DNA of 64,000 bases from Asterias rubens (GCF_902459465.1 NC_047083.1:2728001-2792000); one strand, 5' to 3'; shown: positions 15,301 to 35,100, counted from the first letter of the stretch. Numbers and translations are program-made. Notes: generated from the sequence alone by a model not told the origin.

Positions 15301-18300
15301 GTACATTCATTCTTGTCTTCGTTCTATATCTTCATTCTCTATCTCCATTCTGTATGCTTCATTCAGTCTGTGCAAAACTACTGTTCACTGTAAACCAAAT
15401 ACTTCATCAGGGATCGATTCCACATAGAGCTAAGATTGATCTTAACTGTGTATTAATCTTAACTTCTAAGCCAAGTGCAGGCCTTGAACTTCACTCAAAT
15501 TTTTGACTCCCATAAATGGCCGACCGTGTTAGTTCGCAAAGTCAAAGGAAAACCACGCAATTTCGAGGCAAATGTGTGTGGACCATTGTATTCTACTTTT
15601 AAAATATCTTTCTAATCATATATATGCATTTTATAATAAATGGTTTCAAACGCTTTGCGAATACCAACTCGACCGATCCAAGGCAACGTGTTCCTTTAAA
15701 CTGTATTGGAACTTTGCAAAGGGCACCACAACAAAAGCACAGGGCACCACTGCAATTGCTGTGGTTGCCTTCGGCTATTTCAAGGCCTGAAAGTGTGATG
15801 TCACAATATAACAAAACGTGTAAAACTTTGCCAGTATTGAATTTTTCGTCATCAAGGCAGTCATAACATACTTCTCACTTTGTTTGATTTTGTTGTGTTT
15901 TTTGTAGCTACCAAGCTTTCTTGGTGAGCATAGCTTCAAATGGGAAGGCAACTGGAGAGATATTTCTTGTTTGTCACGGACGGCGTCCTTTGCTGTACGG
16001 GAGATGTCAGGGCACTCTGTGAAGTCATCAGTCAAGGTAAAGGTCACAAAGGTCATACCATGCCGGGGATGCCCATTCCTAAGGAGTCTAATTAACAGAG
16101 GGGATTACATGGAGACTAGAGCAAGCTAGTCGAAATTATGAAACCAAAATTAATAATAATAATCAACCGTTCTTATAAAGCGCATTACACATGGAGTGTC
16201 AAAGCGCTGTTTAAAGTCAAAAAAGAAAAACAAACAAAGTTAGATAAACTTTAACAAGTGAGTTTTGAGATGGCGTTTGAATAAATCCAGAGTTTGTGCG
16301 TCTTTGGGGAGTTTGTTCCAAAGAGTAGGAGAAGACGTGGAAAATGCACGTTGGCCGTAAAACTTGCTTCGTGGTAGTGAAGTTAACAACGATCCACTAA
16401 ATTATATTTGTGAAAATGTTTTACTCATTTCTCAAAAAACTACAGCACCTCAGCAAGTAATATTTTAAGGGAAGCTTTCTACCGTCATTATCTTTAAACT
16501 GTGTAACTTTAATGTAAATCTGTGGATATTGTGTTTTGTGTCCTACAAAAAGTAGTACCCAAACCCTTGGAGCTTTCCAGTAATGTGATTGTTTATGTTG
16601 ACTTACTCTACAGCATTTATATACGAGGGATACGCGTAACGAGCGCATCTACCCAACCCAGGGTTACCTCCTTCAGCTATCCCAGGAGCTTGCCGGGTTT
16701 AAAGCTCTCGGTGGGGACGTCCAGTTCCTGAAGGGAGAGGCAGAGCTACAAATGAACAGGAAGTTCTTCTCGGATTGCGTAAGAAAAATCTCGATTTCAA
16801 AGACCAGCTTTATTTGAATTTTCGTTTTACCCATATACACTCATGTGTGTTAGTATTACATACTCAGTACTATACTCAGTTCTTTCCAAAGCTCTGTAAA
16901 AAAAAATCCCAGGCAAATCACTCGGTTGGGATTCGAACCCACAACCTTAGCAATTCTAGAGCAGTGTCTTACCAACTAGACCACCGAGATTGCCCGGTAG
17001 CTAGAGGCTATACTTTAGCAGTGGTTAAACCGGCAGTAAAACCAAAATTAATTTTCTTTATCCCTGATGCAAATTTCCATATATTAAAACAGTTTTATTT
17101 GATTGGTTTGATTTAGGTTCTCTCCTGCTCACTCCAAGCCGGTCTGATGAAACCATTTAACTACACAGAAACAAGAATAAACGACAGGTTCTTTATCGGT
17201 GGGCCGACGTCAGTCAGAGGGTTTAACTTTCGAGGACTGGGTCCCCACACAGATGGTAAGTTAACTATATAAAAGATAAACCTAATCTATTTTCTGGTTA
17301 CTTAACTAGTTAAATGGATAAAAAACTACTATAGTGGTTGGTTAACAAGTTTTAGTGGTTTACATAAACCCATTGTTGAATAAGCGAGGGGTTGGGATGT
17401 CATGCAGATTTTGGATTGTCTTTTTAATTTAAGATTTGATCTGAAGAGTGTTTACTTCTGGCTTTTCCATTTTACTCAGCTTTACCTCATGAAATGGAAT
17501 AGTCCACAATTCACCTCTTGATTATATTCTGCACACACTGCGCTCAAACGCATCCAATATTTGTATTTAGTGCATCATTTGTGTTTTGATGAGCAAACTT
17601 AATCTCTGGTTGGTAAGACACTGCTCTAGAATTGCAAAGGTTGTGGGTTCGAATCCCACCCGAGAAATATGCCTGTGACTTTTCTTACAGAGCTCGAGAA
17701 AGTACTGAGTATACAGTACTATTACACATGGGTGTATATGGGTAAAACAATAACTAATAAACTCAATCACAGGTATACTGATCGAAACGCTGAGTTGAAA
17801 ACAACGGTTTTTTTTCAGAACCACCCGAACTCATTTAGAGATTACCATTTTCATGATAATACTGCAAACCTTACTATATCAAAATAAATCTCAACGAGCC
17901 AGTTTTTAATTTAAAACACTAGTTTCTTTATGTCATTTTTTCTTCTACTTTTTCTTGTAGGGGATTCAGTCGGGGGCGAGGCCTACTGGGCAACCGGGCT
18001 CCACCTCTACACCCCTCTCCCGTTTATGCCCGGTAGGGGTGGACTGGGCGACCTCATACGAACCCATGTTTTCCTAAATGCGGGGAATCTATGTAATCTT
18101 AATCTAGGTAAGTTTGATGATTTTCTACAGAATCTGTTTTCAAAACTGCAGTTCTTTTACCTTTATCTCCCTAAAGAACTTTTCCTCAACCAATTTTTTG
18201 TGTGAAAATTTTCCAACAGAAGAACAAAATATCCACCAACACCTAGAACAACTGAGAGAGAATTTCCGATGGAGCTACGGAGCAGGTATCATTCTGAGAC

Positions 18301-18874
18301 TAGGGAGAATCGCACGATTTGAGCTCAACTATGTCATACCCAAAACGGCACAGCCGATGGATAGGTGAGTACAGCAATGAGACATTTAAGACTTTCATCG
18401 GAAAAGACGTTGCTCGCTCGCGTTTATCGAGAACGAGGAAGTCTATGCAAGAGGCGTATTCAGGAAATGCGGCAGTATTGCTCCCAGAAGGGGATACAAA
18501 CATTGGTTTATCGCCTATGATTATGTAATAGATGTTAAACTTGCATTTGGATAAAGAATATTAATTTGGTTTTTACCCATACACCGATGTGTGTAAGCAC
18601 TGTATACTGAGTCTTTTCCCAATTCCTGTGATTATGGTTTGCACAAAACAATCAATTAGGAATCAGTAACTCAACGACAATACTTATTCTAGTCATTGTG
18701 AAATCAGCAGTTAGCCTGGCCGGAATCGAACCCACATCCTTGTGACTGCAAATTCTTTGGTTTAACCACTTGACTAATTTATCAGATAATACTAATTTAC
18801 ATTTTTTTCTTTTTTTTGCATTTGACAGTGTGAATGCTGGTCTGCAATTTGGCGTAGGTCTAAGCTTCTTGTAA
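12392..18874 (+). CDS. SAMM50: Sorting and assembly machinery component 50 (Omp85 beta-barrel), 469 aa
   Basis: Exons 12392-12412, 13195-13293, 13382-13571, 13916-14022, 14472-14605, 15006-15093, 15908-16036, 16614-16778, 17117-17255, 17961-18107, 18220-18364 and 18829-18874 (1410 nt). Motifs [15 protein letters not shown] (POTRA), [28 protein letters not shown] and the C-terminal beta-signal [10 protein letters not shown]. Intron 2 is GC-AG. Confidence 0.97.
15111..15370. repeat. 13-mer minisatellite (TTCATTCTGTATC)n in SAMM50 intron 6
   Basis: About 20 imperfect units. Confidence 0.9.
16150..16395 (-). mobile_element. L2-clade LINE 3' end
   Basis: Minus strand reads [18 protein letters not shown]...[10 protein letters not shown], followed by a 3' UTR and (TTA)n tail; typical L2 ORF2 C-terminus. 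Confidence 0.75.
16815..17085. mobile_element. Internally deleted copy of the tRNA-headed palindromic element
   Basis: Left arm plus right terminus (aaccaaaattaat...gatgcaaattt) of the 32693-33093 element. Confidence 0.8.
17606..17748. mobile_element. Right-arm fragment of the tRNA-headed palindromic element
   Basis: ggttggtaagacactgctctagaattgc...gggttcgaatcccacccgag...atgggtaaaac; inverted relative to 16824-16980. Confidence 0.8.
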
Positions 18875-32148: not shown

Positions 32149-35100
32149 TCAATCCACGTTATACATCCAGTCGTTCTGTACCCGACCGTACTGTGAACAA
32201 GCAAAAAATCAAAGAACAAAATTAAAGCATTTTTTTTAATGCAGGAAACTGCTCAAGGAGCCAAGTGACCTGGGCCCAATTTCATGGAGCTGCTTAAGCA
32301 CAAAACTTTGCTTAAGCAAAAAAATCCTTGCTTAGTAAAATTAGATTATCGGCCAAGACTACACTTAATTGTTGTGCTAATTAAACAATAGCTAAATACC
32401 AGTCACATGCAATGTTTATGGCATAAAATTTTGGCCAATAGCATGTGTAAAATAAGCAAGATATTTTCATGGTTAAGCAACTTTTTATTGCTTAAGCAAC
32501 TTCATGAAATTGGGCCCTAGGGGCAATTTCATAGTGCTGCTTAAGCGGAAAGTATTTATATTGTGCCTGCGACAAACATTTGCTGCAATGCGTTTTGGAA
32601 GTTAATTATAACTCACAACTAGTATCAAAGTCCCGACTATTTGAGGCAAAACTAGTCGAGTAGTAAATTTGACTAGTCTTAACATACCTGTATATTAATT
32701 TTGGTTTTTACCCATACACCGATGTGTGTTAGCACTGTATACTCAGTACTTTCCCGAGTCCTGTGAAAAAATATCACAGGCATGTTACTCGGGTGGGATT
32801 CGAACCCACGACCCTTGCAATTCTAGAGCAGTGTCTTACCAACTAGACTACCGAGGTTGCCCGGCAGCTAGAGGCAGTTCGAATCTCGGGCAACCTCGGT
32901 AGTCTAGTTGGTAAGACACTACTCTAGAATTGCAAGGGTCGTGGGTTCGAATCCCACCCGAGTAACATGCCTGTGATATTTTTTCACAGGACTCGGGAAA
33001 GTACTGAGTATACAGTGCTAACACACATCGGTGTATGGGTAAAAACCAAAATTAATATTCTTTATCCCCGATGCAAATTTAACATCTATTATACCTGTAT
33101 ATCATTTAGCTCGTTGTAAAACCTGGTGGCAAGCTTTGCTCCGTTCTTCATCGTCGGTATCTCTAGATCTTCATCTTTGTATAAAATGCTAGAAACAGGA
33201 CATACTACACACGCAGTACCAGCTCCAAAGATCTCATATATCTACATGAAATACAAAAGATAATAATGAATTGAAAGATGTTTCAGACTTAAAGGCAGTG
33301 GACACTATTGGTAATTACTCAAAATAGTTATTATCGTAAAACCTTACTTAGTTACGAGTAATGGGGAGAGGTTGATAGTGTAAAACATTGTGAGACACGG
33401 CTTCCTCTGAAGTGACATAGTTTTCGAGAAAGAAGTAATTTTCCGCGAATTTGATTTTGAGACCTCAGATTTAGAATTTGAGGTCACAAAATCAAGCATC
33501 TGAAAGTAAAGAAAGAAATTGGTTACAGAATTGGTACGAAACAAAAATCGTAAAGATCACAGATTTACATAAAACTTACACGGTCTAATGATGATAATAG
33601 TTGAAAACACCCCTTGAAATATTTCTGTCTGAAATGTCATATTTCTGTCTGAAATGTCATATTTTATGAGAAACGTTTGGAGTGTATTGCTCAGTGAGCA
33701 TTTTATTGACTTTTATTTTTGGCATCAATGCAATGCAAAGTTTGAAATAAGTTTTTCACTATTCTCTCGTGCCCCAGATGACCAATAGATCTCAAACTTC
33801 TACAGGTTTGTGGTTTACTTAAAGTGCTTACACTGCCAGCAACCAATTCTGTAATGTTCCTTTAAAAACTTCAGTGGGCTCAGTGAAGGCATAGTCCTTC
33901 ACCGTGGTCTGGCTAAGTCGCATGTTTAGACGCAGGGGAGTTAACTTACCCTATTCATTTGGTTTGCAGTTACATCATGTGTGTACTACTTGCCAGGTAG
34001 ATTCTGTTCTTAAGAGAACTGTCTTGCTCTATATTCAACTACTGCAGAGTAGATTTTCAGAATTCAGGAGGCTTCTCAGTTCTGAAAAGAACTGTCCTTC
34101 TTTTTAACTACTACATGGGCTGAAGTTAGAAAATCAGCCAGGACTACTACTTTAGCTTTTAGTGGATCTTTATTAACTTGATGTCAAAATTGGTCTCAAT
34201 GTTTCAACTAGCTTGCTCTAGTCATCGTCGGGAGACTTACCCTATTTTCTTTAACGCCTTTGACGAGATCCTTCATCGTGAACGGTCTCTCTGACACTTT
34301 GAATTCACCCTGTAAAGAAACAGCGGAAGTAATTTAATAAGATGATGACAAGACTTTTAGCAGACATGGGCCTCCACTTGGGCTGGAGGATTAATGCTTT
34401 TTAAAAGTCATTTAGACCGTGTCCGAATTGGTGGCTATGGCTGCGGCTACAACCGTTGCCTGGGGTGTTGCTAAGGGCATCCTATACTTCAATGCATAAT
34501 GTTGCGGCGATCCGGCCGTAGCCGCAGCCGCCAATTCGGATACGGCCTTCGTAAAAAAGACAGGGCCCAATTTCATAGAGCTGCTTTTTTAAAAGCACAA
34601 ACAAATAAGTAAAAGCACACCACGGCTGGCAAGTCGCAAATCCGTGTCAGCAGGAATTTGTTCCGAAAATATTTTCTGCTGAAGCAGCTCTATGGAATTG
34701 GGTCGATGTTTCTCTTACAGGCAGTGGACACTATTGGTAATTACTCAAAATAATTATTGGCATAAAACCTTTCTTGATGACGAGTAATGGGGAGAGGTTG
34801 ATGGTATAACACATTGTGAGAAACGGCTCCCTCTGAAGTGCCATAGTTTTCGAGAGAGAAGTATGGAAGAGTTTGCGGTAACACCATGTAATAACAATCT
34901 CTAAATGAGTTGGGGTGGTTCTGAAAAGAACCATCGGATTAACTCGACGTTTCGATCAGTATGCTCTGATCGTCTACTGGAGAGAGAAGTAATTTTCTAC
35001 GCATTTGATTTCGACACCTCAGATTTAGAATTTGAGGTCTCGAAATCAAGCATCTGAAAGCACACAACTTCGTGTGACAAGGGTGTTTTTTCTTTCATTG

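What the first reader, a model, noticed from the sequence alone, without database searches (positions are those of the whole stretch)
32687..33099. A transposon inserted between the G and T of a BCAT splice donor and rebuilt it
Seen (minus strand): exon 10 ends GAT A-TACAG|G, then TATAATAG...ATTAATA (401 bp), then TACAGG-TATGTTAAG. The 6-bp TSD (TACAGG) covers the last 5 exon nt plus the intron's first G. Removing the element and one TSD restores CAG|GTATGT. Because the element starts TAT, the donor became CAG|GTATAA and the original stronger donor now lies about 400 nt downstream behind a 172-bp hairpin. Knowledge: TAY..RTA ends with a 6-bp TSD is the Repbase IS3EU signature (recalled). Inference: element ends that mimic donor positions +2 to +4 allow tolerated insertion at splice sites and may create cryptic splicing.
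Basis: partly seen in the sequence, partly recalled or inferred. Interest (0 to 1): 0.75.

Follow-up and report, generated by a model that had tools for sequence, protein, structure and literature searches.

The report
Retroposon insertion duplicating a splice donor

Summary
The sequence is as described: the penultimate BCAT exon (minus strand) ends at 33095, about 400 inserted bases with a 172-bp perfect hairpin follow, and a second copy of the donor lies 407 nt downstream. The flanking repeat is 12 nt (ATATACAGGTAT), not 6, and covers donor positions -8 to +4. The donor was therefore duplicated by the target-site duplication, not rebuilt by the element's end.

The IS3EU reading fails. In 32 independent copies the family has one constant end and one variable end. 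It is built from a 258-bp tandem unit carrying a tRNA-like module. Half the copies carry an inverted 5' copy that lacks about 35 terminal bases. The modal duplication is exactly 12 bp, at a palindromic target AAC-N12-GTT. These are scars of target-primed reverse transcription of the Penelope-like (PLE) kind. No hammerhead ribozyme is present, and the mobilising enzyme was not found; the abundant resident PLE does not match.

RNA contigs from three studies join 33095 to 32190, which is the join that the upstream copy CAG|GTATAA gives. Whether those animals carry the insertion is unknown, and no empty allele was seen. Earlier notes of this scan reported sister tRNA-bearing, ribozyme-free PLE-type families elsewhere in this genome.

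The parts
33095..33241 (-). Penultimate coding exon of a BCAT (branched-chain aminotransferase) gene, ending ...NELNDIQ
   Evidence: Translation. phmmer against PDB BCAT1/BCAT2 chains, E 4.6e-16, aligned to residues 306-353 of 365. RNA contigs cover 33095-33242 with 0 mismatches.
33091..33102 (.). Upstream copy of the 12-bp target-site duplication (minus strand ATATACAGGTAT). It holds the donor in use, CAG|GT, with the intron's first G at 33094
   Evidence: (family D3). The joint 33095|32190 is seen in three runs.
33059..33093 (+). 35-nt 'tail': the 3' terminus of the element's tRNA-sense strand (ends ...CTATTATA at 33093). It is present at this end only
   Evidence: Unit positions 1-35. In 13 of 16 copies with an inverted part, the inverted part starts 29-49 nt in from this terminus.
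32887..33058 (+). Direct (sense) arm, with a tRNA-like module at about 32893-32966
   Evidence: Inverted repeat I1. 99.5% identical to unit positions 1-207. The Rfam tRNA model scores 48 bits on family units. ARAGORN did not call this arm, which has one substitution.
32864..32886 (.). Turn-around between the direct and the inverted copy (unit positions about 208-229)
   Evidence: The turn-around point differs between copies.
32692..32863 (-). Inverted, 5'-adjacent partial copy lacking the 35-nt tail; tRNA-like module at 32784-32857
   Evidence: 100% identical to unit positions 36-229.
32684..32695 (.). Downstream copy of the 12-bp target-site duplication
32682..32690 (-). Displaced original donor CAG|GTATGT (8/9 consensus matches), 2 nt from the base of the hairpin. 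No use of it was seen in the joints listed
32149..32190 (-). Coding part of the last exon ([13 protein letters not shown], then stop), joined to 33095 in RNA contigs

Best explanation
The block at 33093-32692 is a very young copy of a non-autonomous retroposon family. The family is built from a 258-bp unit that holds a degenerate tRNA-like module and no ribozyme.

It was inserted by target-primed reverse transcription at a 12-bp staggered double nick at a site fitting the family's target AAC-N12-GTT. One target 3' end primed at the RNA's 3' terminus and gave the copy with the 35-nt tail. The other primed about 35 nt further in and gave the tail-less inverted copy. The two cDNAs were joined, producing a foldback. 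This architecture is the one described for Penelope-like elements, so a PLE-type enzyme is the most likely mobiliser, though it was not identified.

The stagger spanned donor positions -8 to +4, so the fill-in duplicated CAG|GTAT. The upstream copy, now CAG|GTATAA, keeps the reading frame, and the mRNA join it would give is the one seen. The original CAG|GTATGT lies 407 nt downstream at the foot of a 172-bp hairpin.

Shown: the anatomy, the family structure, the 12-bp duplication, the target motif, and the mRNA join. Inferred: the RNA intermediate, the twin priming, PLE as the enzyme, and that the insertion-bearing allele is the one spliced correctly.
For: Family: at least 169 scored matches and 1209 first-look candidates in the genome. 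The 258-bp unit occurs as exact head-to-tail multimers.

Survey of 32 independent insertions:
- One end lies at unit position 1-3 in 28 of 32.
- The other end is either 5'-truncated at scattered positions (16 copies) or an inverted copy (16 copies).
- The inverted copy starts 29-49 nt from the tail in 13 of those 16.
- The exact flanking repeat is 12 nt in 17 copies, 13 nt in 2, 11 nt in 1 and 10 nt in 1; controls gave 3-8 nt.
- There is 1-3 nt of microhomology between tail and TSD in 12 of 18 copies.

Target: AAC|N12|GTT (C at -1 in 12/17, P 9e-6; G, T, T after the TSD in 10, 12 and 12 of 17).

[quoted passage not shown] In rotifer PLEs there is a 31-bp tail, an inverted pLTR 37 bp shorter, and 8-10-bp TSDs (PMC3846280).

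The copy is 99.5-100% identical to the unit. DNA-like contigs of run X2 cross both junctions without mismatch. The mRNA joint 33095|32190, with GT..AG ends, is seen in runs X4, X12 and X15 from three studies.
Against: No autonomous partner was found. The abundant young resident PLE (921-aa frame, over 100 GIY-YIG hits) shares only the terminal ATTATA with the unit's tail. Its own copies show 10-17-nt repeats without the AAC/GTT motif, though this is a small sample of 4 clear cases out of 9.

A strictly 12-bp TSD and a palindromic target are more usual for DDE enzymes. The tRNA-like module is followed by a T6 run, so a simple Pol III transcript would not contain the tail. No RNA intermediate was observed. 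11 of 32 copies gave no clear flanking repeat.

The genotype of the animals behind the RNA contigs is unknown: an empty allele would give the same mRNA. No empty allele or orthologous site was available.
Confidence: 0.65

Rival explanations
1. A tRNA-derived SINE mobilised by a LINE (not a PLE), inserted by ordinary target-primed reverse transcription, with L1-style twin priming producing the inversion.
For: The unit has a tRNA-like module with A- and B-box-like motifs (Rfam tRNA 48 bits). The family shows a constant 3' end, variable 5' truncation, microhomology at junctions, and a TSD in the LINE range. The resident PLE does not match the tail or the TSD pattern.
Against: The tRNA-like part is internal, 56 nt into the sense unit, and is followed by T6. 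There is no A-rich or simple-repeat tail. Exact 258-bp multimers, inversion in half of the copies, and a recurrent 35-nt tail asymmetry are described for PLEs and stated not to occur with LINE TPRT (PMC8557442). No LINE sharing the tail was identified.
Confidence: 0.2
2. One reading: a non-autonomous IS3EU (or other TIR or foldback) DNA transposon with a 6-bp TSD, cut and pasted between G and T of the donor.
For: The window copy begins TA.. and ends ..TA, and the core TACAGG is repeated. It has a long inverted repeat. The target motif is palindromic with a fixed stagger, as for DDE enzymes. IS3EU is indeed described with TA..TA termini and 6-bp TSDs (PMC10045372).
Against: The repeat is 12 nt here and in 17 of 32 copies. 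The second end is variable. 16 of 32 copies have no inverted repeat at all and are 5'-truncated head-to-tail multimers. The inverted repeat is not terminal, because of the 35-nt tail. A transposase needs two defined ends.
Confidence: 0.04
3. Not a transposition at all: an assembly artefact or a local duplication/inversion at a repeat.
For: Foldback and tandem repeats are prone to misassembly. The best DNA holders may be the assembly's own sample.
Against: Contigs of run X2 span both junctions (32328-32718 and 33067-33311) with no mismatch. The structure, the tail, the 12-bp repeat and the target motif recur at many unrelated loci.
Confidence: 0.02

Closest known systems
Penelope-like element insertions and their non-autonomous derivatives (solo or inverted pLTR structures; non-autonomous Chlamys such as MRC1)
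   Same: 5' truncation, head-to-tail partial tandems, an adjacent inverted 5'-truncated copy, a 30-40-nt tail at only one end, and short TSDs (PMC8557442, PMC3846280). All were seen here.
   Different: No sequence link to an autonomous PLE was found. The TSD is strictly 12 bp, with an AAC-N12-GTT target, which the papers read here do not mention for PLEs. The unit carries a tRNA-like module.
Animal non-LTR retrozymes (tandem 170-400-nt repeats with type I hammerhead ribozymes, thought to be mobilised by PLEs)
   Same: Small non-coding tandem units of similar size, dispersed with TSDs longer than 4 bp, in a genome rich in PLEs (PMC7229834; bioRxiv 10.64898/2026.07.22.740005).
   Different: The defining hammerhead is absent: no Rfam ribozyme hit at E up to 10 and no CUGANGA...GAAA core on either strand. 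No circular RNA was shown.
L1 twin priming (5' inversions of LINE-1 insertions)
   Same: Both target 3' ends prime on the RNA, giving an inverted 5' part plus a direct 3' part between TSDs, with microhomology at the junctions (own knowledge: Ostertag and Kazazian 2001).
   Different: Here the second priming site is nearly fixed, about 35 nt from the RNA end. Inversion affects half of the copies, and the TSD length is fixed.
IS3EU/GingerRoot DNA transposons
   Same: TA at the outermost bases of this one copy.
   Different: TSD of 12 bp, not 6. No pair of conserved termini, no terminal inverted repeats in half of the copies, and no transposase partner found (PMC10045372).

Membership tests
IS3EU/GingerRoot DNA transposon | TSD usually 6 bp (PMC10045372) | tested here: not met
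   The flanking repeat is 12 nt in the window and in 17 of 32 copies; 10-13 nt in 4 more.
IS3EU/GingerRoot DNA transposon | Conserved TA..TA termini / two defined ends (TIRs) in complete families | tested here: not met
   One end is constant (unit position 1-3 in 28 of 32). The other is variable (positions 29-250) and either inverted or direct.
IS3EU/GingerRoot DNA transposon | Autonomous copies encoding a DDE transposase with the same ends | not tested
   The unit has no coding capacity.
Penelope-like (PLE-type) non-autonomous retroposon | Constant 3' end with frequent 5' truncation | tested here: met
   16 direct copies are truncated at scattered unit positions; the tail end is constant.
Penelope-like (PLE-type) non-autonomous retroposon | Head-to-tail partial tandems (pLTR-like) | tested here: met
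   Exact 258-bp multimers lie inside single insertions flanked by one TSD.
Penelope-like (PLE-type) non-autonomous retroposon | Adjacent inverted 5'-truncated copy, and a 30-40-nt tail at one end only | tested here: met
   16 of 32 copies have an inverted copy. In 13 of those 16 it starts 29-49 nt from the tail. In the window it starts at unit position 36.
Penelope-like (PLE-type) non-autonomous retroposon | 3'-end similarity to an autonomous PLE of the same genome | tested here: inconclusive
   Only the one abundant PLE family could be read. It shares just the terminal ATTATA, and its TSDs differ. Other PLE families could not be fetched.
Animal non-LTR retrozyme | Type I hammerhead ribozyme in each repeat | tested here: not met
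   Rfam scan at E up to 10 over an array found tRNA and hairpin-type hits only. No CUGANGA core is present in the unit. The resident PLE does carry such a motif about 35 nt from its end.
tRNA-derived SINE (LINE-mobilised) | 5' tRNA-related Pol III head able to transcribe the whole element | tested here: inconclusive
   The tRNA model scores 48 bits, but with 4 broken stem pairs. The module is internal and is followed 10 nt later by T6.
tRNA-derived SINE (LINE-mobilised) | 3' tail shared with a partner LINE, or an A-rich/simple-repeat tail | tested here: inconclusive
   The tail ends ...CTATTATA without an A-rich or simple-repeat tail. No partner LINE was searched for.

The most novel reading that the evidence does not exclude
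The insertion belongs to a class of PLE-type, ribozyme-free, tRNA-like-bearing tandem retroposons. Their enzyme makes a symmetric double nick exactly 12 bp apart at AAC-N12-GTT and primes from both ends at once. Because such a long duplication can copy a whole splice-site core, these elements can land on splice donors without killing the gene.
Probability: 0.4. Interest if true: 0.55.

Novelty: new variant of a known kind. Interest (0 to 1): 0.42.

Why it matters
For the gene, this is a clean natural example of a long target-site duplication buffering a hit on a splice site. The donor core is copied, the in-frame copy stays at the exon edge, and the original, stronger copy is moved 407 nt away to the foot of a 172-bp hairpin. 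That gives a testable case of donor competition and of a large intronic dsRNA.

For mobile-element biology, the family adds a well-defined data set to the poorly understood Penelope-type integration. It offers one fixed tail, a second priming site about 35 nt in, an exact 12-bp stagger and a palindromic target. It also shows that tandem 'retrozyme-like' elements can spread without a hammerhead.

The correction also matters for annotation. Hairpin-shaped copies of such retroposons look like MITEs and are easily misfiled as DNA transposons.

Tried and rejected
- **Ribozymes:** the Rfam scan at a permissive threshold and a motif search on both strands of the unit found none.
- **Resident PLE as mobiliser:** there is no similarity beyond the terminal hexamer at word size 7. 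Its copies give 10-17-nt repeats and no AAC/GTT flanks. It was therefore not adopted as the partner.
- **More PLE and element copies:** TSD statistics rest on 32 loci, and other PLE or LINE families could not be read.
- **Empty site inside the assembly (haplotig or paralogue):** the exon flank is single-copy. The intron flank only hits an old dispersed repeat.
- **Pfam on single exons:** no hit, because the peptides are too short. This was replaced by the PDB sequence search.
- **Large RT or transposase frames in the window:** none of 130 aa or more looked relevant.
- **The search of earlier findings by sequence:** blank, which is uninformative.

Full report
**What is in the sequence.**

On the minus strand an exon ends ...AAT GAT ATA CAG at 33095. 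Its 49-residue translation aligns to residues 306-353 of human cytosolic and mitochondrial branched-chain aminotransferase chains (E 4.6e-16). The alignment stops at the equivalent ...DIQ. The remaining 13 codons ([13 protein letters not shown], stop) start at 32190 behind a pyrimidine-rich ...CAG acceptor.

Between the two exons lies a block with a 172-nt inverted repeat: 32692-32863 against 32887-33058, 99% complementary, 23 nt apart. As RNA it folds at -351.5 kcal/mol, with z -39.6 against shuffles.

The repeat that brackets the block is 12 nt, not 6. ATATACAGGTAT occurs at 33102-33091 and again at 32695-32684. The two copies are 407 nt apart.

**What the block is.**

The genome holds at least 169 scored matches, from 1209 first-look candidates. 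The repeating entity is not the 402-bp hairpin. It is a 258-bp unit found as exact head-to-tail multimers. Each unit carries a tRNA-like module on the strand I call sense. The Rfam tRNA model scores it at 48 bits, with two broken pairs in the acceptor stem and two in the anticodon stem. ARAGORN calls it 'Ser-AGA', 74 nt, without the long variable arm of a real tRNA-Ser. The module is followed 10 nt later by a T6 run. No ribozyme family matched even at E up to 10, and the hammerhead core is absent from both strands.

I compared 32 independent insertions:
- 28 have one end at unit position 1-3. This is the 3' terminus of the sense strand, ending ...CTATTATA.
- 16 are direct copies, 5'-truncated at scattered positions and often spanning more than one unit.
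- 16 carry an inverted copy at the 5' side, with a turn-around point that differs between loci.
- In 13 of those 16, the inverted copy begins 29-49 nt in from the terminus. About 35 nt of 'tail' is therefore present at one end only.

The window copy follows this pattern: tail 33059-33093, direct arm, turn-around, then an inverted arm starting at unit position 36.

The longest exact flanking repeat is 12 nt in 17 loci, 13 nt in 2, 11 nt in 1 and 10 nt in 1. Control windows displaced by 60 bp gave 3-8 nt. The repeat overlaps the tail by 1-3 nt in 12 of 18 cases, which is microhomology.

I rebuilt 17 empty sites and oriented them by the element. They give a palindromic target, AAC | 12 bp | GTT. 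C occurs at -1 in 12 of 17 (P 9e-6). G, T and T follow the duplication in 10, 12 and 12 of 17 (P 4e-4 to 6e-4). The duplicated segment starts A/T-rich.

**Classification.**

IS3EU families have TA..TA termini and usually 6-bp TSDs (PMC10045372). Both features were tested here and fail. A cut-and-paste enzyme also cannot explain one fixed end combined with a truncated or inverted other end.

A constant 3' end, 5' truncation and junction microhomology are the marks of target-primed reverse transcription. [quoted passage not shown]
- head-to-tail partial tandems;
- an adjacent inverted 5'-truncated copy;
- a 30-40-nt tail at one end only.

In rotifers there is a 31-bp tail, an inverted pLTR 37 bp shorter, and 8-10-bp TSDs (PMC3846280). 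Animal non-LTR retrozymes are tandem units of this size tied to PLEs, but they are defined by a hammerhead (PMC7229834; bioRxiv 10.64898/2026.07.22.740005). This family lacks one. So it works like a PLE-type non-autonomous retroposon but is not a retrozyme.

**The mobilising enzyme is open.**

The genome has a very young PLE. There are over 100 GIY-YIG matches, many in 921-aa open frames, and copies are 99.8% alike. It has a hammerhead-like CUGAAGA...GAAA motif about 35 nt from its 3' end. Its terminus shares only ATTATA with the unit's tail. Its 5'-truncated copies show repeats of 10-17 nt and no AAC/GTT flanks, with 4 clear cases out of 9. I therefore do not name it as the partner. A LINE partner remains a live rival.

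**Likely mechanism (inference).**

- Two nicks are made 12 bp apart, each 5' of GTT on its strand.
- The 3' end on one strand anneals by 0-3 nt to the RNA's ...UAUA terminus and primes the tailed copy.
- The 3' end on the other strand primes about 35 nt further in. In the window there are 4 nt of microhomology, ATAT.
- The two cDNAs are joined at a variable point, which gives the foldback.
- Multimers imply a multimeric or circular template. How that template is made without a ribozyme, and what the tRNA-like module does, is unknown.

**Consequence for the gene.**

In the window the GTT of the target motif is donor +5..+7 (GTATGTT). The stagger therefore spanned donor -8..+4, and the fill-in duplicated CAG|GTAT. 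The upstream copy is followed by element sequence and reads CAG|GTATAA, which matches the CAG|GTAAGT consensus at 6 of 9 positions and has lost +5 G. The original reads CAG|GTATGT (8 of 9) and lies 407 nt downstream, 2 nt from the base of the hairpin. Reading through gives Q-V-stop. Use of the downstream copy would add 407 nt to the mRNA.

Contigs of runs X4 (1592 nt), X12 (1501 nt) and X15 (poly(A) RNA, 260 nt) come from three studies. All join 33095 directly to 32190, with GT..AG ends. No joint from 32687 is among the 15 joints listed, but 622 others were not shown.

The caveat is that an empty allele would yield the same mRNA, and the genotype of those animals is unknown. DNA-like contigs of run X2 cross both junctions without mismatch (32328-32718 and 33067-33311), so the insertion is real in at least that sample, which may be the assembly's own. 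No empty allele was seen in the assembly. The exon flank is single-copy, and the intron flank 32556-32678 is an old dispersed repeat. The pre-insertion state is therefore inferred from the duplication alone.

**Age.**

The arms differ by one base. The copy is 99.5-100% identical to the unit, and many loci are 100% identical. The insertion is recent and the family is probably still active, so a presence/absence polymorphism is plausible.

**Relation to earlier notes of this scan.**

Other agents described sister families in this genome, which they call sea-star-like; I did not verify that. One of those families has a 312-base unit. They read them as Penelope-type, tRNA-bearing, ribozyme-free tandem retroposons. 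I had reached the same working idea before the look-up and tested it independently on this 258-bp family. The agreement is not independent proof. New here are the 12-bp mode, the palindromic target, the mismatch with the abundant PLE, and the splice-donor consequence.

**Verdict.**

The IS3EU and 'rebuilt by the element's end' interpretation is replaced by a PLE-type retroposon whose 12-bp target duplication copied the donor. Interest is moderate: a neat, testable case and a useful data set on Penelope-type integration, but of a kind already noted in this genome.

Noticed in passing
window 16817-18631: A cluster of older copies (82-90% identical) of parts of the same 258-bp unit, in both orientations. 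This suggests an older subfamily or nested insertions.
   Followed up: no
window 33269-33400: The intron upstream of the exon starts with a very high-copy dispersed repeat. Summed contig word depth is in the millions in all DNA-like runs, and many contigs end at 33288/33289.
   Followed up: no
window 32556-32678: An old interspersed repeat (75-83% identical to at least 39 other loci) ends about 6 nt from the downstream TSD copy. The target intron was already repeat-derived.
   Followed up: no
L043:1017-4385 (G000:C2:24071316-24074684) and many other loci: A very young Penelope-like element with a 921-aa open frame: over 100 GIY-YIG matches and copies 99.8% alike. It has tandem 135-190-bp repeats upstream of the ORF and a hammerhead-like CUGAAGA...GAAA motif about 35 nt from the 3' end.
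   Followed up: partly
L062 and L056 (G000:C2:10862800-10866300; G000:C10:7493600-7497000): Two further insertions of the family sit on donor-like strings: GTAAGT inside the duplication in L062, and GTAAGG directly after it in L056. Whether these are real splice sites was not checked. The motif's GT after the duplication could bias hits towards donors.
   Followed up: no
G000:C21:5544377-5544901: Two copies of the resident PLE's 3' region lie tail-to-tail 2 bp apart, the second lacking its last 77 nt. This arrangement differs from the tails-outward foldbacks of the 258-bp family.
   Followed up: no
window 32893-32966 versus 32784-32857: ARAGORN calls the tRNA-like module in only one of the two arms. 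The single arm difference (C to T in the anticodon-arm region of the direct copy) is enough to lose the call, which shows how marginal the cloverleaf is.
   Followed up: partly
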